The notes under the pieces were generated by a model. That model was not told the DNA's origin and searched no databases. It saw only the letters and a program-made list of their open reading frames with translations. 64,000 bases of DNA from Octopus sinensis (taxonomy: Eukaryota), in the NCBI RefSeq assembly GCF_006345805.1, contig NC_042997.1, forward strand, positions 79,174,001-79,238,000, read 5' to 3'. Positions 732 through 64,000 of this stretch are shown piece by piece (positions within the stretch are counted from its first letter, which is position 1; each line of letters opens with the position of its first letter). The translations under genes were made by a program, and so were the position numbers.

Positions 732-3308
732 TACTCTTTTACTCTTTTACTCTTTTACTTGTTTCAGCCATCCGGCTGAGGCCATGCTGGGGCAACGCCC
801 TTGTTGCTACCCCTCTCAAGTCCAGTTTTGCCGTGGCTGGCCACTGATCTAAGAGAGAGTTTGTAGCTGCTGCCCTTAGGTTACCTTCGTACCTTGCAGT
901 GGGTTCATCTGGGATCCCGGAAAGCAGCTTGTCTAGATGTTTTTTGAAATGTCCACATCCGCATCATGTAGATCTCTTAGTTTTCTTGGCAGTTTGTTGA
1001 ACAGCTGAGGGCCCCTGAACCCCAGGCTATTACAGTATCTGCTCCTTACCCTGGATGTGGAAGACGGGACCTTTGGCACCACACATGACGTCCTGTACGG
1101 GGATTGGAACAGCTCTCAATTCCAAATTTGGTGCTAGTCCCCTCCAGGATTTTCCATATGTATATCACTGCATATCTCTCTCGTCTTCGTTCCAAGGAGT
1201 ACAAAATTGAGTTCCCTAAGCCTCTCCCAATAGTTCTTTTCTTTCGTGGTGGAAATCCTCTTGTGAAATGTCTTTGGATTGTCTCAAGCTCTGTGGTTAG
1301 TTTGACACTATGCGGTGACCACAGTTGGGACAGTAGTCCAGGCGGCTTAGGACAAATGTCCTCCATAGTGTCAACATGGTCCTCCAGTCTCTTGTCCGGA
1401 ATGTCCTCAGGATCCAGCCTGAGTCGTCGCACATTGTCGCCACCTTCGCGATGTGTGAAGAAAAAGATGCATCGTCACTCATGTCTATCCCCAGGTCCCC
1501 GTATTGATTTCGATACTGGATTTCGATCCCTCTTGACCAGTATAGTTGTGTGTATGTATATGTGTTTACAGCTTGATATTGTAAGGCTTGAAATTTACCA
1601 GCATTAAATTGCATGTTGTTGTCTTCAGCCCTTTGTATATGGCATCCGATCTTGTTGTAAAGGTCAGCATCAGCTGGGTTTTTTTTTTGATGCCTGTGCT
1701 ACCTTTGTGTCATCAGCATAGCTAGTGAGGATGTTGTTTGTGCTACCAAGGGCATGTCAGAGAGCGCCACCAAAACAGCAAGGGTCCCAAGACTGTGCCC
1801 TGTGGCACCCCTTGCTATTGGTGTCTTTCCCGAGAGGGCTCCATTGGCTGCAACCATCTGGCTTCTGTCCTTCGGAGTCATGTATCCACTCACCTACTTT
1901 TCCTGTTATGCCGAGTCTGAGTAATTTGTGACATATCACTCCGCTGTGTCGACTTTGTCAAAGGCCTTCGCAAAGTCGAGATATACCACATCCACCTGTG
2001 AGCGATCCAGTAGTTGTTTCAGTACCCAGTCGTAGTGTTGTAACAGCTGCGTAAGGCAGCTTCTTCCTGGGCGAAAGCCATGCTGTGTGTCAGTGAGACG
2101 GTTAGTTTCTTCGAGGAACGTGATCAGTTTTTTTCTGATGATTCGTTCCATGACCTTACTTATGTGTGACGTCAGGGAGACTGGCCTGTAGTTTTTGGCC
2201 TCTGCTCTACTCCCTCCTTTGTGGATAGGGCATATGGTGCCTTCTTTTAGCGCCCTGGGCAGTTTACCGTTAGCCAAAGAACCACTGAGACTTCTTCAGT
2301 GGTCCCGCTAGGGCATGCCTGCATGTTTTTAGGAGGACTGCTGGGAATCCATCTGGTCCAGCAGCTGAGTTTATCTCATTTCTTCTATGGCAGATATTAC
2401 ATCCTCTCTGTTATGTCTAGTGGTCGATGGTTTGTGTTTGGTTTTGGAGTGTTGTGGCATCAAAGAAAACTTCTGGGTTTGTGATTTGCATGTGCCCCAG
2501 AGGGGATGTGAACACACTTTTATACTGTTCCTTTAGTATTTCACTTATCCCTTGGGGGTCCTCAGTTAGAGAGCCCTTTTTATCAAAGAGTGGGCCAATC
2601 TTGCAGTGTACCGAGGTGGTTTCTTTCGCAATTTAAAGAAGGCTTTAGGGTTGTTTTAATATTCTCTATGGCCCTGGCTTCTCTCTCTGCCCTCTCCTTC
2701 TCATAGGAAAGTTTGAGTGCAGTTTCCGTTTCAAAAAGTTTCAGGTGGAGTCCCTCATTGTTTCTCTGCCGTGCATTCAGTTGCTTCGAGAGCTTAGCTC
2801 TTCGCCTCATAAGTATTTTCCTGTCTCTGGAATAACGTTCCTATGCCCGCTGGCTTTTTTCTCCGGACAAACTTATGGCATATGTTCTGTATTGTTGTCA
2901 TGAAATGTTGGAAATGTGTGTTGGTGTCTTTGTGGTGATGAAGTCACTCCAGTCATGTTTTCGGATCTCTTCGTTGATCTTCTTCCAGTTTGCCTTATGG
3001 AAGTTTAGACTGGATAGGCCTGTGGTATTTTCTAATGGCTGCGTCTCAACTAACTCTCTCATACCATATCATACCTCTACTAAGTTGTGATCTGAGAGAA
3101 TTGTTGGTGTTACCATTATGTTGTGGATGAGCATCGGGTTGCTTGTGAAACAGAGGTCCAAGACATTCTCACCTCTTGTTGGCCAAAGCACTGCTTGCTC
3201 CATGAAAAACTTGCGTGTGAGAGCCAACAAGGACTCTGTCTGTCTCTGTTCAAGTGATGTCATTCCAGGGAGGAGATGGCCATCTGGCCATTTGACTTTC
3301 GGAAGGTT
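732..3308 (-). mobile_element. CR1-like LINE, 5'-truncated and frameshifted (end of APE endonuclease + RT + 3' tail)
   Basis: [13 protein letters not shown]...SDHNLV (APE); NYRPVSLTS...QHGFRPGRSC...YLDFAKAFDKVD (RT); SRLDYC...LYSLERRR; 3' tail (TAAAAGAG)n. Confidence 0.9.
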
Positions 3309-5010
<1,702 letters not shown>

Positions 5011-5436
5011 ATCATTATTATTAGGAATTGTTCATTAACCTGTTGATATACAAAAAAATAACTACTTACGATGGGATCTTATACATGAAGTGGAATGAAA
5101 ATCATTAATAATATTGATTTGAGTGTGAGCTCAGGTTTTGACCTTAATAGCTTATTCAACTAGGATACATGCATACATACAGACTTACTATATGTATGTA
5201 TGCAGGCAAGAATGATTCTATGTATATATGTATTCATGTATGTATGCATACATCATACACACACGCGTGCACACACACATACACGTGCACACATATAGTA
5301 AGTCTCAACATTCTTTCATTATGATCGTCTCAAAAATACATAATTCAAATCCATCATAAATATAAATGATTATGTAATATTACTTCACATTATTTTGATC
5401 TATGGTCACCTCATCAGATAATCAAAGGTCAAAAAG

Positions 5437-5489
<53 letters not shown>

Positions 5490-5879
5490 GGAATAGGCTA
5501 CAAATATTGTAAATGTTGCTTTTAAAAACAAGAATTTGTAAAGAATCTGCTTCTTGTTACTCTAACAATGACACAGAACAAAACACTACTTTAAATAGTC
5601 TATAATTTTCTACACTTGTTCATCATGAGATTTTTTAATTCCCCATTTATATATTTTCTTATGTGATTTTTTGAGTATTTTTATGTGAGTGGGTTTGGAT
5701 GTAATGATTACTTATTTGTTGTTTGTTCATATTTTCATTTGCTTATGCTTCCATGCATAGATTACATCATCAGTATGTAAGCATACATGAAATTATTACT
5801 GAATATAGGATAATTATAACTGTTCATAATATAGGCAAAAGGTATGAAATGAAACTTGAGGGAGGAGGTTAGTCAATAA

Positions 5880-6092
5880 TATTGGTTTCAAATTTTGGCA
5901 CAAGACCAGCAATTTCCGGGGAGCGGGCAAATCTGTTACACTAACCCCAACAGGTACCTGTTTATTGACCTTCTGAAGGATGAAAGGCAAAGTCAACCTT
6001 GGCAGAATTTGAACTCAGAACACCAAGACAGACGAAATGCAGCTAAGCATTTTGCCCAGCATGCTAACATTTCTGCCAGCTCATCGCTTTAA
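5880..6092 (-). mobile_element. tRNA-derived SINE of an abundant family (other degraded copies near 6190, 6990, 8140, 9450, 19000, 39820, 62130)
   Basis: A-box-like GAGCTGGCAGAA and B-box-like GAGTTCAAATTC on the minus strand, plus central motif CTTTGCCTTTCATCC shared across copies. Superfamily (Meta/Deu type) not resolved. Confidence 0.7.
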
Positions 6093-49274: not shown

Positions 49275-51911
49275 TTTGATGCTCAGGAAAATGAAAACGA
49301 CTTTTACATTTTGAGCCTACAGTCTTCAACAGAAGGAATAAGAGAAAATAAACAGAAAGAATGAAAAAAAAAACTAATAGATTTCAGCGGTCCAGCATAC
49401 CTTTCCACCTTCACTTTCTACACCAGGAGGTGCTTCTTCAGTCAACTGTTGATCATCAGGACCATCCTCTTCCTCAGCAGAACAATCAGATCGTTTGGCT
49501 AATACTTCTTCTCTCAGTTTAAAGAACTCGTCTAGAGATAAGATTTCTTTGGGATGATGACTATTTATAAAGGATTTAAAACTGGAAAAATAAAAAGAAA
49601 CAAAAAAAAGGCAAATTTTTTTTAGTATATAACCCAAATTGCATTTACTAAATATAAAATTTAATGGAAAGGGAAAGACAAAGAGATGGGATTTATATTT
49701 ACTGTATTACCATCTCTCTTGTATAGGCTCCCTGTTGTCATTTTCCCTTCCTCTTATATTGTCAAAGAATCAAGTTCTAGATTTACATTCTGAACCAGAC
49801 TGCTCTCCTCAAATCACCCTTGGAATCAACTTGGCTATAGGCTCACCCCTTTCCATGTAGTGATCTCTGATATGGAAAAAAAAATAAGCAAAAGATTTTA
49901 TACTATATCAAGAATAAAATTAACTCTAGTAGATCTTATGTGCAACTTCTTGAATATGATGTATTTAATGTGCATATCAATGTTTAAAGTTTTATCATCT
50001 AGCTCAGTGTGCAGGTCCTTTCAGAGATTTGTTGTCAAAACAATTAAACACACAAAGTACTGTCTAATTATTGTGAACAGTCACTTAGCTAGTGATTTTC
50101 AGTTCTATTCTATGGGTTTTAGGGTTACTATAAATGTAATGTAAATGAGGAACCTAACGCACTGATTTAGTAAAAGCAGGTGCTTTAAATTCCACTTTTC
50201 CCACCAGTGATATGATAAACTTCTACAGTTAAAATGTCCCTAAAAACTTCTAGATTGCAGTCTAATTAATGGTAGTCAATGTTTTAACACATGATTTAAA
50301 AATTAAACAGCTTCAAACTCTAAGATTTGATAATTATAGTAATATCAAGAAAGCAAGAAATTATTTATAATTAATGCAGAAGAAGCACTTCCATAATCTT
50401 TGAATTCTAACAGATGAGTATAATGAAAAGCCAGTTATGTGGGGATGAAACAGGAGAGATTGTTTCCTTTATAATTAAAAGCCATTCTTTATAAATAATT
50501 TATATTTTACATTAAAATATTTGGAAAATATGTTATTAGTTCTGTTTTTAAGGCTTATAAAATAGAGGTGAATTAACAGAAGCAAAGAAGGAATTGTGAC
50601 ATTTAAGTTATATACACACTGACACATACATATATAATTTACACATATGTACACACACACATACATGTATACATACATAAATGAAGTTCAGGTTTGTGCC
50701 AGGACAGAATCCCACCAATGCCATCTTCCTAGTGAGACAACTACAGAAGTTATTAGCAAAGAGCAAGCCACTATACTTAGCATTCACTGTTCTGGAGGTC
50801 TTTGACAAGGTACCATGCTCTGTAGTTTGTTGGTCACTAAAAAAAACTTAGGTGTAGATGAATGGCTTGTGATAGCTGTGCAAGCCATGCACAGAGATGC
50901 TGTCAGCAAGCAGAGAATTCAGTAAGGAATTTAGTGTGCAGGTTGGTGCTCATCAGGGCTCAGTTCTCAACCCTCTTCAGTTCATTAAAGTTCTCCAGGC
51001 CATAACAGAGGAGTTCAAGACCAGCTTCTTTGAGAACTTCTGTATGCCAATGATATAGTTCTCGTAAGTGAATCTGTTGAAGATTTAGTGGAGAAATTCC
51101 TAACATGGAAGCAAAGTCTAGATTGAGAAGCCTCAAAGTAAACCTAGTAAAGAAAAAAGTTTTAGTTAGCAAGAAAGATAGGATTAAAGTCACCTGGGAA
51201 GTAGACATGCTCAATATGCAGAAAATGATAAATAAGAATTCAATATGGTATAAGCTATGAGTGAACAAAATATATAGTGGAATTACAAGAGAAGAAAAAC
51301 TTAGAGAAAAATTATATATGTAATAGTTGCACAGGAGTAGTTAGCCATAACAGCAGTTGTGAGAAAATACTTGGCTTGGAAGACTCTCTATAAGTAGTTG
51401 ACAGCTTTTTGTTTACTATGAGACCTCTAATTAGCTTTGAAAGTAGAGAAGCCAGAGTAAGCATGGAATTGTAGGAAGATCACAGAGTTAATCTTGCTGG
51501 CAACAAGATTCACTTTTCAAGTGAATGGTAGATTGTGTGATGCATGCATATGAAATGTGAGGATGTGTTACAAGAGAAACATGGGTACTAAATGTAGAGG
51601 ATGTATGAAAGAAATGGGACAAATATATGTCACTGGAACGACAGAGCAAAGATGAGGTGAAAGACGAGCTGGGTTTAAAAGGAATTGGCTGTAATGTGTA
51701 AGAGTGAAGACTGTACTAGTGTAGACACCTGACACATATAGATGACAATAGGGTGTACAGAAGTACCAAACAATCTAAGTGGAAGGACACTGCAGAAGAG
51801 AGAATACATAGGAACAACTTCATGAATGAGATGACAGAGAAGCATAAGTCCTAACTTATGATTCGTCGTCTAGATAAATTCTGTCCTGCCTACACAAACA
51901 TAGAAAGAGGG

Positions 51912-59200: not shown

Positions 59201-61358
59201 GGTGTTTTTTACGTGCCACCGACACAGGTGCTAGACGAGGCTGGCGAACGGCCACGCTCGGATGGTGTTTTTTATGTGCCATGGACACAGGTGCCAGACG
59301 AGGCTGGCGAACGGCCACGCTCGGATGGTGTTTTTTTACGTGCCACTGGCACGGAGGCCAGGCGAGGCTGGCACGGCCACGATCGGATGGTGTTTGTTAC
59401 GTACTGGGTGGATTAAGTGAATATGTAGTCATATGAGAGGGTTTGTAACTGATGTAGCTGTTGCACTGAAATGTAAGGCATTTTGAGAGAAACTGCAAAG
59501 ATAGAGTGAATGATGGCCTAGATTTTAGAATCTGCATTCAGATGAAAATATTTGGTTATCTAGAAGACATGTTAAATGGAGATTGTGGGATATAACTCAG
59601 TGATGGTGATTAAAATGAGATGAACAAGGAACAAGTTCTATGAACTGAGTGGTGTACTAATGAGAAGGGGTGTGTCACTGAAATTGGAAGTAAAGGTGTA
59701 TGTTGTAGATAGGAATAGAACCAGCAAAGGGTGTTGTGAATAGAAATGGGATAAAATAGCTGAGTCATGAGTGCAAGAAGGATGAAAGTGACTTGGTGAG
59801 AGGAATGATGAAAATGAATGTGGAAGACCAAGAAAAATATAAAGGAATGGAGAAAGAATTGAAAGCAAAGAGCAAAATAAAGACAAAGATTACAATGGGT
59901 CTGCAAGCTAAGCCCAGCATGAAAATGGTCTTAAGACACTTGCACATTTTTGTGTGTGTGTATATCCACATAAACACATGCTCACATATGTCCAACCTAT
60001 GCAAACATGGAGAAAGAAAACAAAAATGATGGTGAAATAGTGTAGTAAACAAGTGAAAAATCAAAAGTCATTAGAAGTGAGGAAATAAATAATCTGAAAA
60101 CCTAGCCAATTAGAACACATACACAACAATGCAAAGAGAGGAAGAGAGGAAAGAAAAAATGCAACAAGGAGACATTAGTAAGAAATTTGATACATAATCA
60201 CTTAAACAAGAATAAGACTAACAAATCATTATTTTTAACTAGCCAGGAAAAAGTCTACTTTTATTATCAAAATTCCTACTTTGAGAGTTTGAAGATCAAA
60301 CTACTAAATGCATGTGATTATAGCGTGTGTGTGTGTGTGTGCGTGTGTTTGTGTAAAGACTTTTTTTTATCAAAATGCAAGAATAAATGGATTTACTTGT
60401 CAAAATGATGACTGTATAGTTGGAGAGGAATTTTCAGCAGTTCATCATATAAGCACATTACATTTTGCAAATTTTTTTGTTGTTTTTCCCAGTGAATAAC
60501 TGAATCCCACAAGCGATCAGCACGGAAGTCAGTACCAGCAGCATTCAGAGCTTTTCTGTATAATCTGAAAACAAAAGCCAAAAAGATTAACTGCAAAGAA
60601 ATTTATGCACCATTGTTTTGGTTATTATAGTAAAATGTCTCCCTGCTGTTACTATCCTTTTTCATTACTCCTATCATTATCTCCTTCTCTTCACACTGGC
60701 ACTTGACATTCTCCTATACCATCTCTTATTTCCTACTCTGAGTATCTATTGCAGTCAACCTTGTACAAAGGTGAAGCTTTCCTTTCATCTTGCAGGATAC
60801 AAGACCTCACAAGTGCAGGTGCAATGATAAAACATCCCTTGTAAACTCTGTAAAGTGAATGATGAACAGGCAGAGATAAAGTTGAGAGAACCTTATACTC
60901 TTGTTTTTTTTTTGTTTTGTTTTTTTTTTAAACATGGCAACTTCTAGTGTTGGTGCCACAATAAAATGCACTCTGTATACTATTACATGACTAGTGTTAG
61001 GAAGGGTATCCAACCATACAAATTATGCCAAAGTAAAACATGAGTGAAGTATGGTCTCCAACTTGCAACTTGTTCAACCCATGCCAGTGTGGAAAGTAGA
61101 TGCAAAATGATATACAGTTAAAATATTTTAGAGAATATATATCACATTAAAAGTATTGAAGAAAAAGCAATTTTACTGAGAATTAAAAATATCAATGTTT
61201 GAAAAATCACACTGCAAAGTCATCAAACTTAAGATTAACACTACTTACTCCTGAATTCTCTCAACATTTTCACACTCTCTTGATTCAGTAACAGAAGAGA
61301 TGTAATGAAGCCAAAGTTCTACACTTAGAGGAATAGCCTTTACACCACGCTCAAAGAC
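36074..61358 (-). CDS. PRPF39: Pre-mRNA-processing factor 39 (HAT-repeat U1 snRNP-associated protein); 12 coding exons in window, 5' part outside window
   Basis: Exons joined by hand at GT-AG sites give 1653 nt (550 aa + stop). Diagnostic motifs match PRPF39 as I recall it: [107 protein letters not shown]. Confidence 0.96.
36214..36427. mobile_element. TTAA-flanked MITE (piggyBac-like ends)
   Basis: TTAAATCTTTAGCATT ... AATGCTAAAGGGTTAA imperfect TIRs. Confidence 0.55.
37123..37309 (-). CDS. PRPF39: PRPF39 exon ([13 protein letters not shown]...[11 protein letters not shown])
   Basis: 187 nt; acceptor aattttcAG, donor CAA|GTAAGT; phase 2/0; EDPLEKK resembles vertebrate EEPEEKK. Confidence 0.88.
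38939..39019 (-). CDS. PRPF39: PRPF39 exon ([26 protein letters not shown])
   Basis: 81 nt; acceptor ttcttttAG, donor GG|GTAAGT; phase 2/2. Confidence 0.94.
39390..39571 (-). CDS. PRPF39: PRPF39 exon ([15 protein letters not shown]...[17 protein letters not shown])
   Basis: 182 nt; acceptor cctttttcAG, donor AA|GTAAGT; phase 0/2. Confidence 0.95.
40365..40424 (-). CDS. PRPF39: PRPF39 exon ([20 protein letters not shown])
   Basis: 60 nt; acceptor attatAG, donor GAG|GTAAGT; phase 0/0. Confidence 0.9.
40541..40749 (-). CDS. PRPF39: PRPF39 exon ([10 protein letters not shown]...[14 protein letters not shown]...YSRFLSK)
   Basis: 209 nt; acceptor tgtttttgaAG, donor AAG|GTAATT; phase 1/0. Confidence 0.95.
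42270..42396 (-). CDS. PRPF39: PRPF39 exon ([42 protein letters not shown])
   Basis: 127 nt; acceptor ttttttatAG, donor G|GTAAGT; phase 0/1. Confidence 0.96.
43536..43700 (-). CDS. PRPF39: PRPF39 exon ([28 protein letters not shown]...LYEDFWLK)
   Basis: 165 nt; acceptor aattttcAG, donor AAA|GTAAGT; phase 0/0. Confidence 0.97.
44915..46724 (-). mobile_element. RTE LINE, 5'-truncated, in a PRPF39 intron; (TA)n on both sides
   Basis: 229-aa ORF 45866-46555 matches the RT of 24691-27255; same 3' UTR and (GAT)n tail. Confidence 0.93.
46798..48020 (-). mobile_element. Degraded mariner (DD34D-type) transposon
   Basis: [11 protein letters not shown]...[21 protein letters not shown]; TIR-like ends ACGAGGGGGGTACCCAAA / TTTGGGTACCCGCTCAT. 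Confidence 0.8.
48111..48221 (-). CDS. PRPF39: PRPF39 exon ([18 protein letters not shown]...[11 protein letters not shown])
   Basis: 111 nt; acceptor tttttttttcAG, donor GGG|GTGAGT; phase 0/0. Confidence 0.96.
48600..48800. other. GC/CpG-rich structured intronic island (regulatory element or ncRNA, unassigned)
   Basis: About 190 nt with much higher GC than its intron, 7-8 CpG, several nested stems; no transposon hallmarks seen. Confidence 0.45.
49401..49581 (-). CDS. PRPF39: PRPF39 exon ([26 protein letters not shown]...GVESEGGK)
   Basis: 181 nt; acceptor tttatttttccAG, donor AAG|GTATGC; phase 2/0. Confidence 0.94.
50680..51870 (+). mobile_element. Old degraded RTE RT fragment
   Basis: [34 protein letters not shown]...[19 protein letters not shown]; boundaries approximate. 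Confidence 0.8.
55113..55980 (+). mobile_element. maT-type (DD37D) Tc1/mariner deletion derivative
   Basis: WQQDSAPCH...[17 protein letters not shown] with 37 residues between the last two Asp; ends TA|CAGGGTGC ... GCACCCTG|TA. Confidence 0.85.
57167..58374. mobile_element. Non-autonomous Tc1/mariner-superfamily (pogo/Tc2-like ends) element interrupted by an RTE tail
   Basis: Ends CCATATTTTCCGGTGTATAA / TTATAGACCGGAAAATACGG; TA on the left. Confidence 0.65.
57345..58025 (-). mobile_element. RTE complete 3'-UTR copy without ORF
   Basis: Reverse complement of 27445-27994, with a higher-order repeat array. Confidence 0.88.
58912..59400 (-). mobile_element. RTE 3'-UTR copy with homogeneous about 57-nt tandem units, inserted in an older LINE remnant (about 58380-59900, +)
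   Basis: Same tail; candidate TSD GTACT; flanks show EMQFAF- and YLEDML-like RT residues. Confidence 0.8.
60397..60564 (-). CDS. PRPF39: PRPF39 exon ([19 protein letters not shown]...QLYSHHFD)
   Basis: 168 nt; acceptor ttttgttttcAG, donor AA|GTAAAT; phase 2/2. Confidence 0.96.
61249..61358 (-). CDS. PRPF39: PRPF39 exon ([36 protein letters not shown])
   Basis: 110 nt; acceptor ttttctccAG, donor GA|GTAAGT; phase 0 in, phase 2 out. Confidence 0.95.
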
Positions 61359-61722
61359 CTGGAGAAAAATATGTAACAGTTACAAACCAAGATAAATCAA
61401 GCCCTGCAAACAGGACCGAATAGAGTAAAGTAGTTGTAAAATGTTGAAAAGTAAATGGGGTAAAGTCGAGCAAGCCGAACAATTGGAAGTACAACCACGT
61501 GATTACCGTCGTCAACGAAGCTCTCCTGGCGACTGGCACAGTCAAACAGGGACAGTTGACGTTCATCTGTTGTTGACCCTGTAGTATTAGGGATTTTCTT
61601 GCTGCAAATCCATAGCCCTCCCTAGCAGTGGACAAGTTCAAAATTGTGAAATCTCACAAAAAATCTAAATCACGATTTCAGAGACCCTCACATCTGCCAG
61701 GTCTCCAGTAGATTCATTATGT
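61359..61722 (-). promoter_or_regulatory. Candidate poison exon / structured splicing-regulatory element of PRPF39
   Basis: Acceptor tttttctttgcAG followed by in-frame ACA TAA TGA; donor-like motifs at 61691, 61657 and 61506; about 10 CpG in about 300 nt versus nearly none in flanking intron; several hairpins. Confidence 0.6.
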
Positions 61723-64000
61723 CTGCAAAGAAAAATATTACATAATAACACAGTGAGAGCTTGATTCTAAACTAGGCACCTGGCATGAAGCAGGAAATAA
61801 TCAAAGATCTGTGTGTGTGTGTATTCATGTATTATAAATTGGGCATTCTCTAAAAAGTATTGAAGTTATGAAGTGGGTGGCAAATATCAAGTTACTTGAA
61901 ACTGAGTGTGTGTAAACATGTAAAACAGCATGTGAAAATATGTTTAAGTTATTAAGTTTAGAATAGAATGCATCAGTTCTGAGGAACTAGATAATAATAC
62001 TTTTAGAAACATTGTATGCTAAAAAACGTAAAACCATTTTAAAACCAAAAGATGTTAGACTTTGAACTTTACTCTATCGATGTCAGCATTTCTAAAAACC
62101 TTAACATCTTTTTCTACTATGTTGATATATTTAGGCAGTAAAATAATAGACTCAGAGCATTGGACAAAATGCCAGTGGCATTTCAAGTACAATCCTTTAT
62201 GTTCTAAGTTCAAATCCCACTGAGGTCAACTTTGCTTTTTGTACTTCTGAGGTCATTAAAAAAAAATACCAACCAGTCCAGTACTAGAGCTGATTTAATA
62301 TTCATATAAATGCATTCTAAATATCAATGGAATTGTACTAGAGTTTCTATTTTAGTATTATAATCTTCTTGCATATTATTCTAAATGGTAAAAACTTTTC
62401 TTTATTCCCATGCACCTTTTCATATATTTGGAGTGTTTAGACATGATGTGAGTTCTTGGGTGCCTTTAGCAAAGTTTACTGGATTGCAAGCATTCAAACC
62501 AGACCACCACCAGTTCACTCTCTATCCAGATTTTTCCTGCAGACATTGATCTACATGTTAGACATGGCATCAGATGTACTGATCTCAGGAGCCTGAGACT
62601 CTGCTCTCCTTTATCCTCAAACTTTTAAATATGCATATATAAATACATTAAGTATTTCATTATACAATTATTTCTGTGTAAATTTGAAAAGAAAAAAGTC
62701 AGTAGTGATTATGCAAAATAATTCATATAACCTACATGATTACAACTTACTAAAATAGTATTCAGAATTATGTTTCAAGTATAAAGAGTTATTGTTGGAT
62801 CTTAAAATACAAGATTATTACCTTTGACAGAGCAATTAAAAGAATCTAAAGACCACAGACAAGTACAAATGAACAAACATGTAAGCACTATCATTTGTCA
62901 TTACTAACATTTTCTGAAGAAACCTGGAAAAACACCCTTTAAGTAACAGACTTATATCACATTCAGATGAAATCAGAAGATTTATTACATAGCTGAAAAT
63001 GAGAACTTGCACTAAAGGATTCGGAAGAGGAGTAAATATTTTCTATTGTAAATAATGTTTCAAGTTGTTTGAGGATTTTTATGTCTCTGACGTATATTTT
63101 CATGAGTCAAATTTTCTAAAAATCAAAGTTCAAGATAGTCTAAATCAGAGATAAATGGAGAAAGAGTTTGATATTGTTAACTAGAAATTTATGTTGTCTT
63201 CAATCTTGTAAATAATAATATACAAGAGAAATTACTTATGAATAAAAAAATATTTAATTATTATCAGAATTATGACTACCCTCTCTCATTAAAAAATTAA
63301 ATAAACCAACAAAAAAGCTGTTATGCGATTGACCAACCTGCTAATACTACCAACCAAATTTCCATCAAACTGCACCTTGCTGTTTTAAAAAATGGAAAAC
63401 ACATTGGACAACATAGTCCTCGATGGTGCATTGTCTGAAAATCACAAGATGAGATATACACAGCTGGAAGGTTTTTAGAGTTGACACTGAGCTAAAGAAT
63501 AATAGATTTCGTTTACCAAGGGCATCCAACTACATGACTTGCTTCAACAATTTAAAGTTTCAAAACAATACATTAATGGTTATTTTATAGACATCTTCAA
63601 TAAATTATAGCTAGATTAGGTATCAAAGTTTGTTTACTTATCCAGCATATTTAATATTCATTTCATTCAACAGGAAACCTTTTTACAACAAAGCCAAATT
63701 ACTATTTTCTTTTGTACATGCACAGTATGTTTTCTTTGAACGAGTCAAAGAGGTGGTTTAGTCAATTATATTAAAAGAGCCTTTATGCAGCTACTCAACT
63801 GCCTAGAAATAGCTGTTAAGCTTCCCTTGGAGATATATCAGGAAAAAAATGCTCAGGGGATATAAAAACTACCAATAAATCTTTTGTCATGTCTGGAGAG
63901 ATGAAAGACAGGAGGAGAAAATTGAAGAATTTCAACTCAAATCTACAAGGTACTGAACTATATACAACAAAGCATCTAATTTGCCTCCCTACTGCTAATA

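What the first reader, a model, noticed from the sequence alone, without database searches (positions are those of the whole stretch)
61359..61722. Candidate poison-exon cassette directly upstream of the PRPF39 'VFERG' exon
Seen: on the gene strand a strong acceptor (taatatttttctttgcAG) opens onto ACA-TAA-TGA. The downstream exon starts in phase 0, so any exon beginning here adds a stop at its second codon. Donor-like sites give exons of 31 nt (GAT|GTGAGG, 61691), 65 nt (TT|GTGAGA, 61657) or 216 nt (ACG|GTAATC, 61506; leaves a 148-nt intron with a long pyrimidine tract). The segment keeps about 10 CpG in a CpG-depleted gene body and has no transposon hallmarks, which suggests purifying selection. 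Established: splicing factors commonly autoregulate through AS-NMD poison exons. Recollection, not checked: vertebrate PRPF39 has NMD-coupled alternative splicing and ultraconserved intronic sequence. Inference: this could be a cephalopod counterpart, homologous or convergent, in a U1-associated factor.
Basis: partly seen in the sequence, partly recalled or inferred. Interest (0 to 1): 0.88.

Follow-up and report, generated by a model that had tools for sequence, protein, structure and literature searches.

The report
Conserved poison exon in octopus PRPF39
An extra, stop-codon-carrying exon sits inside the octopus gene for splicing factor PRPF39. It is more conserved among cephalopods than the gene's coding exons and probably serves to turn the gene's own output down.

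Summary
The sequence is as described, and the feature is real. The gene on the minus strand is PRPF39 of Octopus sinensis/vulgaris; coding exon 4 ('VFERG') is 61358..61249.

- **Conservation:** The block 61810..61423 is about 93% identical between Octopus and Argonauta. Every coding exon is less conserved (75-90%), and the rest of the intron is unalignable.
- **Donor use:** The 216-nt donor (ACG|GTAATC, 61507|61506) is used in annotated 'isoform X2' of three Octopus species. The homologous donor is used in an assembled mRNA from a more distant cephalopod.
- **Not shown:** Use of the acceptor at 61722 in cephalopods is not shown. The 31- and 65-nt donors have no transcript support. NMD could not be tested.
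- **Other molluscs:** They carry a stop-containing alternative exon in the same intron. A bivalve mRNA and a Pecten RefSeq model join it to the upstream exon, so there it is an internal cassette.
- **Vertebrates:** The documented mammalian PRPF39 poison exon lies in intron 8, a different intron, so this is not its orthologue.

Best reading: a conserved poison cassette with a weak donor, plausibly sensing PRPF39/U1-auxiliary activity. It is a new member of a known kind, partly present already in RefSeq models. A second similar block lies upstream of exon 6.

The parts
61723..61810 (-). Conserved upstream intronic flank holding the polypyrimidine tract and the acceptor AG (61724-61723).
   Evidence: This flank is 90.9% identical to Argonauta and 100% identical to O. 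bimaculoides, while sequence further upstream is unalignable at 42%. The 14-mer TTTTTCTTTGCAGA occurs once each in the window, L001, L002, Gigantopelta L006 and Pecten L008, always at the orthologous spot. No cephalopod transcript shows use of this acceptor.
61507..61722 (-). The 216-nt alternative (poison) exon. It begins ACA TAA TGA and has four in-frame stops. The ATG used for annotated isoform X2 is at 61566-61564.
   Evidence: It is 92.2% identical to Argonauta and 100% to O. bimaculoides. Its 3' two-thirds are 81% identical to the cephalopod mRNA L007. Isoform X2 (P0121, P0124) begins MNVNCPCLTVPVARRASLTT|VFERG, which is this exon's last 60 nt spliced to exon 4.
61423..61506 (-). Weak donor GTAATC followed by the most conserved piece of the element. 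It contains CpGs and U-rich runs and may be an intronic splicing enhancer.
   Evidence: It is 97.6% identical to Argonauta, with 2 mismatches in 84 nt. The donor matches 6 of 9 consensus positions; 7 of the 11 constitutive donors in the window are GTAAGT. The signature A[CT]G|GTAAT[CGT] with at least 2 CpG in the next 45 nt sits at the orthologous place in all 8 genomic loci examined.
61359..61422 (-). Non-conserved 3' end of the 148-nt downstream intron, including the pyrimidine tract and acceptor of exon 4.
   Evidence: It is only 50% identical to Argonauta.
61249..61358 (-). PRPF39 coding exon 4 ([36 protein letters not shown], phase 0 start, donor GGA|GTAAGT).
   Evidence: The spliced model of exons 4-15 translates exactly to residues 98-647 of P0122, the O. 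sinensis/vulgaris PRPF39 X1. The exon is 87.3% identical to Argonauta.
61686..61691 (-). Candidate alternative donor GTGAGG, which would give a 31-nt exon.
   Evidence: The site is present and conserved in Argonauta. No transcript or annotation uses it.
61652..61657 (-). Candidate alternative donor GTGAGA, which would give a 65-nt exon.
   Evidence: The site is present. It reads GTGACA in Argonauta. No transcript supports it.
49620..49950 (-). Second conserved intronic block, upstream of coding exon 6. It looks like a second cassette, with acceptor ttccatatcag|AGATCAC and donor GAGATG|GTAATAC.
   Evidence: A colinear block at 81.6% identity over 637 nt covers exon 6 plus about 440 nt of intron, and the core is nearly invariant in alignment A3. 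This is a sequence reading only; no transcript was checked.

Best explanation
Window 61722..61507 (minus strand) is an alternatively included 216-nt exon in the intron between PRPF39 coding exons 3 and 4.

When included as an internal cassette, it places TAA and TGA at the second and third codons after residue 97. The main reading frame then ends after 98 residues, with twelve exon junctions still downstream. That is the classical configuration of a nonsense-mediated-decay substrate, so inclusion lowers productive PRPF39 mRNA.

The exon has a strong, conserved acceptor. Its donor is weak (ACG|GTAATC) and sits in the best-conserved, CpG-containing part of the element, followed by U-rich intron. 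The donor is therefore the likely control point. By analogy with human PRPF39, high PRPF39/U1-auxiliary activity would raise inclusion and close a negative feedback loop. Human PRPF39 recruits U1 to weak donors near GC-rich RNA and drives inclusion of its own poison exon.

**Shown:**
- The exon and its flanks are under strong purifying selection.
- The donor is used in Octopus gene models and in a cephalopod mRNA.
- The stops are in frame.

**Inferred:**
- Use of the acceptor at 61722 in cephalopods.
- NMD of the inclusion isoform.
- Autoregulation by PRPF39.
For: **Gene identity and model**
- PRPF39 is identified. Exons 4-15 translate exactly to P0122.

**Conservation**
- Only exons and two intronic blocks align between Octopus and Argonauta across the gene.
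- The block 61810..61423 is about 93% identical, against 75-90% for the coding-exon blocks.
- The two Octopus species differ at 2 of 562 positions here, against 92.8% identity over the surrounding 3.7 kb.

**Donor use**
- The 570-aa isoform X2 starts MNVNCPCLTVPVARRASLTT|VFERG in O. sinensis XP_029635355.1, O. vulgaris CAI9715355.1 and O. bimaculoides XP_014790339.1.
- Logan mRNA contig L007 from another cephalopod carries the homologous exon spliced at ...TTGACGACG|GTTTTTGAACGAGG onto exon 4, followed by the fully spliced downstream CDS.

**Cassette architecture in the same intron elsewhere**
- Bivalve mRNA L010 reads exon 3, then a 110-nt insert with an in-frame TGA, then exon 4.
- Pecten X2 maps as exon 3, then an ~80-nt exon, then exon 4.
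- Many mollusc RefSeq isoforms start M|VFERG-exon, which reflects an exon ending ATG|GTAAT.

**Not a coding exon**
- Frame-shifting indels (+2, +6, -11) separate Octopus and L007.
- The in-frame ATGs are at different positions in the two.

**Mechanistic precedent**
- PMC9808567: PRPF39 promotes weak 5' splice sites near GC-rich RNA.
- PMC13408128: human PRPF39 is needed for inclusion of its own poison exon.
- PMC11389820: an activator binds the intron just downstream of the human poison exon.
- PMC6582350: the mouse and human alternative exon is NMD-inducing.
Against: - No read or contig in hand joins coding exon 3 to 61722 in any cephalopod. L007 starts inside the exon.
- Pecten X2 uses an internal acceptor, not the conserved 14-mer acceptor.
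- Annotators read the inclusion isoform as coding for an N-terminally truncated protein.
- NMD sensitivity and dependence on PRPF39 are untested.
- Across molluscan classes, only the acceptor region is significantly similar. Deep homology therefore rests on position and splice-site signature.
- Predicted RNA folding is no more stable than shuffles (z about 0).
Confidence: 0.65

Rival explanations
1. The conserved block is an alternative first exon with an internal promoter. It would produce a functional N-terminally truncated PRPF39, the annotated 570-aa 'isoform X2', which lacks the first two and a half HAT repeats. The block would then not be a decay-inducing cassette.
For: - RefSeq and ENA annotate the product as a protein isoform in three Octopus species.
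- Many molluscs have models starting M|VFERG.
- An in-frame ATG with an open frame to the donor exists in Octopus, Argonauta and L007.
- The block is richer in CpG than its surroundings.
- L007 begins inside the exon.
Against: - A strong pyrimidine tract and AG are conserved at the 5' edge, with 88 nt of conserved intron before them. That is typical of a regulated internal exon.
- The ATG is not at the same position in Octopus and L007, and +2/-11 indels shift the frame between them, so the peptide is not conserved.
- In bivalves the exon is joined to the upstream exon.
- ATG at the exon end in other molluscs, against ACG in cephalopods, L010 and P0034, is also what CpG decay of ACG would give.
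- Annotation pipelines pick the longest ORF whenever a PTC lies upstream.
Confidence: 0.2
2. The block is a conserved intronic splicing-control element, or a structured RNA, needed for correct removal of the long (>7 kb) intron or for exon 4 definition. The exon-like transcripts would then be by-products.
For: The highest conservation is intronic, just after the donor (97.6%). A local hairpin (CGUCAAC...GUUGACG) abuts the donor, and L007 keeps it with a one-sided C-to-U change.
Against: - The donor is used in mature, otherwise fully spliced mRNA and in gene models of three species.
- Folding energy equals that of shuffles.
- The inner hairpin arm is deleted in L007.
- The acceptor is not a recursive splice site, because AG|ACATAA does not recreate a donor.
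- There is no Rfam match.
Confidence: 0.1
3. The segment is a chance arrangement of splice-like motifs in ordinary intron, or an exonised transposon fragment.
For: About 100 comparable acceptor-like sites lie on this strand of the window. Stops are expected in AT-rich sequence.
Against: - The segment is 93% identical to Argonauta where the neighbouring intron is unalignable.
- There is no second copy in the window or in the 43-53 kb orthologous loci.
- There are no terminal repeats and no tRNA head.
- Transcript evidence supports it.
Confidence: 0.01

Closest known systems
Mammalian PRPF39 poison exon (between exons 8 and 9; De Bortoli 2019 PMC6582350; PMC11389820; PMC13408128)
   Same: It is in the same gene. 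It is a PTC-containing alternative exon with highly conserved flanks. Its inclusion lowers productive mRNA. In human it depends on PRPF39 itself and on a factor bound in the intron just downstream.
   Different: It lies in a different intron: intron 8 there, the intron between coding exons 3 and 4 here. Octopus intron 8 has no conserved block. The mammalian product keeps the N-terminal domain, whereas here translation stops after 98 residues. No sequence comparison with the human exon was possible.
Ultraconserved poison exons of SR-protein and hnRNP genes (Lareau 2007 and Ni 2007, as cited in PMC9808567)
   Same: These are non-coding cassettes in splicing-factor genes that are more conserved than the neighbouring coding exons. 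Conserved intronic flanks of roughly 100 nt surround them, and they give AS-NMD feedback.
   Different: Those are vertebrate elements in RNA-binding regulators. This one is in a U1-associated HAT-repeat protein. Its strong conservation is shown only within cephalopods, with positional conservation across molluscs.
NMD-coupled alternative regions of other U1-associated factors (SNRNP70, LUC7L family); from my own knowledge, not checked here
   Same: The logic is the same: a component or helper of U1 snRNP limits its own mRNA through a splice choice that needs U1 activity.
   Different: None of these was examined here, and no sequence relationship is claimed.
RefSeq/ENA 'PRPF39 isoform X2' models of Octopus and other molluscs
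   Same: These models contain this very exon, or at least its 3' part and its donor.
   Different: They present it as the 5' end of a coding isoform. They do not note the in-frame stops relative to the main start codon or the exceptional conservation.

Membership tests
AS-NMD poison cassette exon of a splicing-factor gene | Both the inclusion and the skipping isoform exist. | tested here: met
   The X1 (647 aa) and X2 (570 aa) models exist in O. sinensis, O. vulgaris and O. bimaculoides. The same distant-cephalopod protein cluster holds both the inclusion contig L007 and canonical contigs such as L004.
AS-NMD poison cassette exon of a splicing-factor gene | The exon's 5' splice site is functional. 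| tested here: met
   The ...ACG|GTAATC junction to exon 4 is implied by the X2 proteins. It is seen directly in mRNA contig L007.
AS-NMD poison cassette exon of a splicing-factor gene | The exon is internal, so its 3' splice site is joined to the upstream constitutive exon. | tested here: inconclusive
   The acceptor is strong and conserved. No cephalopod junction was found, and L007 starts inside the exon. An internal cassette is shown in the same intron in bivalve mRNA L010 and in Pecten X2.
AS-NMD poison cassette exon of a splicing-factor gene | An in-frame premature stop lies more than ~50 nt upstream of the last exon junction. | tested here: met
   TAA is at 61719-61717, the second codon of the exon. 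Exons 4-15 follow it.
AS-NMD poison cassette exon of a splicing-factor gene | The exon and its intronic flanks are conserved above the neutral background. | tested here: met
   Identity to Argonauta is 90.9% (upstream flank), 92.2% (exon) and 97.6% (downstream flank). Adjacent intron is 40-50% and exon 4 is 87.3%. The exon is 81% identical to L007.
AS-NMD poison cassette exon of a splicing-factor gene | The inclusion isoform is stabilised when NMD is blocked. | not testable with these tools
   This needs an experiment or read-level RNA-seq data.
AS-NMD poison cassette exon of a splicing-factor gene | Inclusion responds to the level of the encoded protein (autoregulation). | not testable with these tools
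   It is inferred only, from the weak donor and from human data (PMC9808567, PMC13408128).
Orthologue of the mammalian PRPF39 poison exon | It lies in the same intron of the gene. | tested here: not met
   The human exon lies between exons 8 and 9 (PMC13408128), and its product lacks only the C-terminal domain (PMC6582350). The octopus exon precedes coding exon 4. Around octopus exons 8 and 9, only the exons themselves align to Argonauta.
Alternative first exon encoding a conserved N-terminal variant | The start codon and the encoded peptide are conserved. | tested here: not met
   The ATG position differs between Octopus and L007. Indels of +2, +6 and -11 nt shift the frame.
Alternative first exon encoding a conserved N-terminal variant | A transcription start lies at or just upstream of the exon. 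| not testable with these tools
   No 5'-end data are available.
Intron-hosted small RNA (snoRNA, miRNA, other Rfam family) | It matches a covariance model or has an unusually stable fold. | tested here: not met
   No Rfam hit falls in 61359..61810 even at E up to 10. Folding z-scores are -0.13 and -0.01.
Transposon-derived exon | There are dispersed copies or terminal repeats. | tested here: not met
   No other copy exists in the window or in L001 and L002. There are no terminal repeats and no tRNA-like head.
Recursive splice site / RS exon | The acceptor is followed directly by GT, so that a donor is recreated after the first splicing step. | tested here: not met
   The acceptor reads AG|ACATAA.

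The most novel reading that the evidence does not exclude
The exon could be the cephalopod form of an ancient PRPF39 control module.

- **The module:** a stop-containing cassette 120-250 nt upstream of coding exon 4. It would be defined by a strong acceptor (TTTTTCTTTGCAG|A) and an unusual weak donor A[C/T]G|GTAAT followed by CpG-containing intron.
- **Its reach:** it is present in cephalopods, gastropods and bivalves, and possibly in fish. In Conger conger the annotated CDS starts ATG|GTAATG, 192 nt before the VFRRG exon.
- **Its function:** it would act as a sensor of U1-auxiliary activity.
- **A possible duplicate:** a second GTAAT-donor cassette upstream of exon 6 could duplicate it within the octopus gene.

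If so, PRPF39 would have kept decay-coupled self-control since before the mollusc classes split, and vertebrates would have added or moved a second poison exon to intron 8.
Probability: 0.3. Interest if true: 0.7.

Novelty: new member of a known kind. Interest (0 to 1): 0.5.

Why it matters
PRPF39 is a helper of U1 snRNP that decides the use of weak donors. In mammals its level is set by a poison exon.

Cephalopods and other molluscs hold a different, very strongly conserved stop-carrying exon in another intron of the same gene. This suggests that decay-coupled self-limitation of this factor is a recurrent or ancient solution.

The exon also gives a concrete, compact element of about 390 nt on which the 'weak donor as sensor' idea can be tested outside vertebrates.

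For annotation, it means that 'isoform X2' of mollusc PRPF39 is probably a non-productive transcript, not a protein variant.

Tried and rejected
- **Short protein queries:** Queries of 37 and 44 aa failed, one as too short and one with no shared words.
- **P0004:** Its 'MFERG' start looked like a poison-exon product. Its contig L003 uses the normal exon 3-4 junction, and the truncation comes from a different 5' end.
- **Isoform X2 look-up:** X2 could not be looked up on contigs, because only the longest product per gene is on record.
- **Cephalopod profile against other molluscs:** An nhmmer profile of the cephalopod block gave only the acceptor as top hit in Gigantopelta (E 0.03), a weaker one in Pecten (E 0.21), and nothing at the site in Mya or Mytilus.
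- **Shuffle tests:** Exon bodies and downstream introns are not significantly alike across classes. I therefore do not claim sequence homology beyond cephalopods.
- **Other element types:** Small RNA, stable RNA structure, tRNA-derived SINE, terminal repeats and recursive splice site were all negative.
- **Human minigene sequences:** The supplement of PMC13408128 is not held as text.
- **Literature:** A search found no paper on a cephalopod or mollusc PRPF39 poison exon.

Full report
**Observation.** On the minus strand the sequence reads ...tgtaatatttttctttgcag|ACA TAA TGA ATC..., with the exon's first base at 61722.
- GAT|GTGAGG (GT at 61691);
- TTT|GTGAGA (GT at 61657);
- ACG|GTAATC (GT at 61506).

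The next exon starts at 61358 in phase 0 (GTC TTT GAG CGT GGT = VFERG) and ends at 61249 with GGA|GTAAGT. The segment has 10 CpG, o/e 0.62 against 0.32 for the window, which is only in the top ~10% of windows. The motif pattern by itself is not remarkable. About 100 equally pyrimidine-rich YAG sites lie on this strand of the window, and half of them have a donor-like motif 30-300 nt downstream.

**Gene and species.** A spliced query built from the open frames of the minus strand hit Octopus bimaculoides PRPF39 at 99% identity and Argonauta hians PRPF39 at 90%. A splice-aware reconstruction of exons 4 to 15 translates exactly to residues 98-647 of the O. sinensis/O. vulgaris protein P0122. The window therefore comes from that species pair. 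Coding exon 3 lies beyond the window edge. In O. bimaculoides the intron is about 7.4 kb and in Argonauta about 8.3 kb.

**Conservation.** I fetched the genomic loci of Argonauta (L001) and O. bimaculoides (L002). Across the whole gene, Octopus and Argonauta align colinearly only at exons and at two intronic blocks. Everything else is either unalignable or dispersed repeats. The first block is 61809..61240.

Identity to Argonauta by segment:

| Segment | Identity |
|---|---|
| 88 nt before the acceptor | 90.9% |
| 216-nt exon | 92.2% |
| 84 nt after the GTAATC donor | 97.6% |
| Last 64 nt of the intron | 50% |
| Coding exon 4 | 87.3% |
| Flanking intron | about 40% |

No coding-exon block of the gene exceeds 90%. 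Between the two Octopus species there are 2 differences in 562 nt here, against 92.8% identity for the surrounding 3.7 kb. The acceptor tract, TAA TGA, the GTGAGG site and the GTAATC donor are all kept in Argonauta. The GTGAGA site becomes GTGACA. The Argonauta exon is 217 nt, so frame preservation of the exon is not conserved.

**Transcript evidence.** The protein cluster of Octopus PRPF39 contains a 570-aa 'isoform X2' in three species: O. sinensis XP_029635355.1, O. vulgaris CAI9715355.1 and O. bimaculoides XP_014790339.1. It begins MNVNCPCLTVPVARRASLTT followed by VFERG.... These twenty residues are the last 60 nt of the candidate exon, from the ATG at 61566 to 61507, spliced to exon 4. 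The 216-nt donor is therefore used in three annotations.

A Logan RNA-seq contig from a more distant cephalopod gives direct evidence. Its protein is 80% identical to Octopus, so it is probably a squid or cuttlefish, but the species was not identified here. The contig (L007) starts inside the homologous exon, at the equivalent of about 61653. It runs through ...GTGCCAGTCGCCAGGACCGCCTTGTTGACGACG|GTTTTTGAACGAGG into exon 4 and then the fully spliced remainder of the mRNA. Its exon part is 81% identical to Octopus, with indels of +2, +6 and -11 nt. These indels shift the reading frame, and the in-frame ATGs are at different positions. The exon is therefore conserved as nucleotide sequence, not as a peptide.

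No contig or model in hand joins coding exon 3 to 61722 in a cephalopod. That step remains inferred. The 31- and 65-nt variants have no transcript support.

**Other molluscs.** Many RefSeq 'X2/X3' isoforms start exactly at this exon boundary. Examples are M|VFERG in Mya, M|IFERG in Gigantopelta, M|VYETG in Mytilus, M|VFDKG in scallops and M|VFEKG in Biomphalaria.

Genomic loci show why. Each has an exon ending ATG|GTAAT[C/T/G] 123-247 nt upstream of exon 4, followed by CpG-containing intron. The signature A[CT]G|GTAAT[CGT] with at least 2 CpG in the next 45 nt sits at the orthologous place in all eight genomic loci.

Two cases show an internal cassette directly:
- Pecten X2 maps as exon 3 (read in another frame), then an ~80-nt exon, then exon 4.
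- Bivalve mRNA contig L010 reads ...YWKKYADMEKRHNNLDKATE, then a 110-nt insert with an in-frame TGA, then IFERG....

The 14-mer TTTTTCTTTGCAGA occurs once each in the window, Argonauta, O. bimaculoides, Gigantopelta and Pecten, always at the orthologous position, and nowhere else in 284 kb.

Shuffle tests temper this. They find significant cross-class similarity only around the acceptor: Octopus-Gigantopelta z = 8 and Octopus-Pecten z = 3.9. The exon body and the downstream intron are not significantly alike. Profile searches agree. A stop-containing alternative exon in this intron is therefore a general mollusc feature. Common descent is plausible but not proven beyond cephalopods.

**Vertebrates.** The literature confirms that mouse and human PRPF39 carry a conserved NMD-inducing alternative exon (PMC6582350). 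It lies between exons 8 and 9, and its inclusion needs TRNAU1AP and PRPF39 itself (PMC13408128, PMC11389820). That is a different intron. The octopus introns around exons 8 and 9 contain no conserved block. The octopus exon is therefore a counterpart in logic, not the orthologue of the documented vertebrate exon.

One loose end remains. The annotated CDS of the eel Conger conger starts with ATG|GTAATG, 192 nt upstream of its VFRRG exon. This single case has the same signature.

**Mechanism.** Inclusion puts TAA at the second codon after residue 97, with twelve junctions still downstream, the textbook NMD configuration.

The donor matches 6 of 9 consensus positions. Seven of the eleven constitutive donors in the window are GTAAGT. 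The region of strongest constraint spans the last third of the exon and the first 84 nt of the intron. It is CpG-containing and is followed by U-rich runs.

Human PRPF39 promotes use of weak donors near GC-rich RNA (PMC9808567) and is required for inclusion of its own poison exon (PMC13408128). I therefore think the most likely working is negative feedback: more PRPF39/U1-auxiliary activity leads to more use of the weak donor, more inclusion and less productive mRNA. This last step is inference.

A local hairpin next to the donor is predicted. Folding energy is no better than that of shuffles, and part of the hairpin is deleted in L007, so I give structure little weight.

**Rivals.**
- **Alternative first exon making a truncated protein.** This is the main rival. 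It fits the annotation. It is weakened by the conserved acceptor and upstream flank, by the non-conserved ATG and frame, and by the bivalve cassettes.
- **Pure intronic control element.** This does not explain mature mRNAs that use the donor.
- **Chance, transposon, small RNA or recursive splice site.** All were tested and rejected.

**Novelty and score.** The exon is implicitly present in RefSeq/ENA models. I found no description of it as a conserved poison exon. It is a new member of a known kind: poison exons in splicing-factor genes, already known for this very gene in mammals at another site. It is notable for its degree of conservation, its recurrence across molluscs and its unusual conserved weak donor, but it is not surprising in principle. 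Interest 0.5.

Noticed in passing
window 49620-49950 (minus strand), upstream of coding exon 6 (49581..49401): This is a second intronic block that is nearly invariant between Octopus and Argonauta, inside an otherwise unalignable 10.8-kb intron. It reads like another cassette: acceptor ttccatatcag|AGATCACTACATGG and donor GAGATG|GTAATACAG, about 130 nt before exon 6. In the gene frame it carries a TGA about 19 codons in. The donor is again ATG|GTAAT.
   Followed up: partly
L011 7833-8196 (Conger conger PRPF39 locus): The annotated fish CDS starts with a 3-nt initial exon, ATG|GTAATG, 192 nt upstream of the VFRRG exon. CpG-containing intron follows it, and a possible acceptor ttttgggcag|ACTCTGTCAGTGATGCTCTAA lies 171 nt before it. 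This is the same signature as the mollusc exon. It is one species and one annotation only.
   Followed up: partly
protein P0123 (O. vulgaris CAI9715356.1); start codon maps to exon 5, window 60564..60397: A third annotated isoform of 478 aa starts at MCLYDELL, the first Met after V98. An annotator would call this isoform if a stop lies upstream and the 61566 ATG is absent. It might reflect a shorter variant of the cassette or another 5' structure.
   Followed up: no
exon-end codon of the cassette in several species (window 61509-61507; L005 7875; L006 9186; L008 4092; L009 6925): The cassette ends ACG in cephalopods, in bivalve mRNA L010 and, judging from its terminal Thr, in P0034. It ends ATG in Mya, Mytilus, Pecten, Gigantopelta and Conger. 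A C-to-T change at a CpG would turn one into the other and would create the 'M|VFERG' isoforms seen in annotation.
   Followed up: partly
window 59072-58911, 57495-57347, 44984-44914, 27994-27836, 20743-20583, 259-94: A short dispersed repeat of about 150 nt is present in many copies on both strands. It is shared with many places in the Argonauta locus at 70-85% identity. It is probably a SINE-like family common to octopods.
   Followed up: no
window 46558-45413 and 3560-940 (minus-strand frames): Long open frames here have reverse-transcriptase-like motifs (for example YADDL) and lie in PRPF39 intron 7 and downstream of the gene. They are probably LINE/retroelement remnants.
   Followed up: no
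window 12596-12334 and 10008-9746: Two stretches about 2.6 kb apart give nearly identical open frames (GSMLALNQFLPVSLCYIYFINHRRIRNKF...). This is a local duplication or two copies of one repeat.
   Followed up: no
window ~3000-5200 and 200-700: These are long AT-rich, low-complexity TA/CA-type simple-repeat tracts. GC falls to 0.20 in 4001-6000.
   Followed up: no
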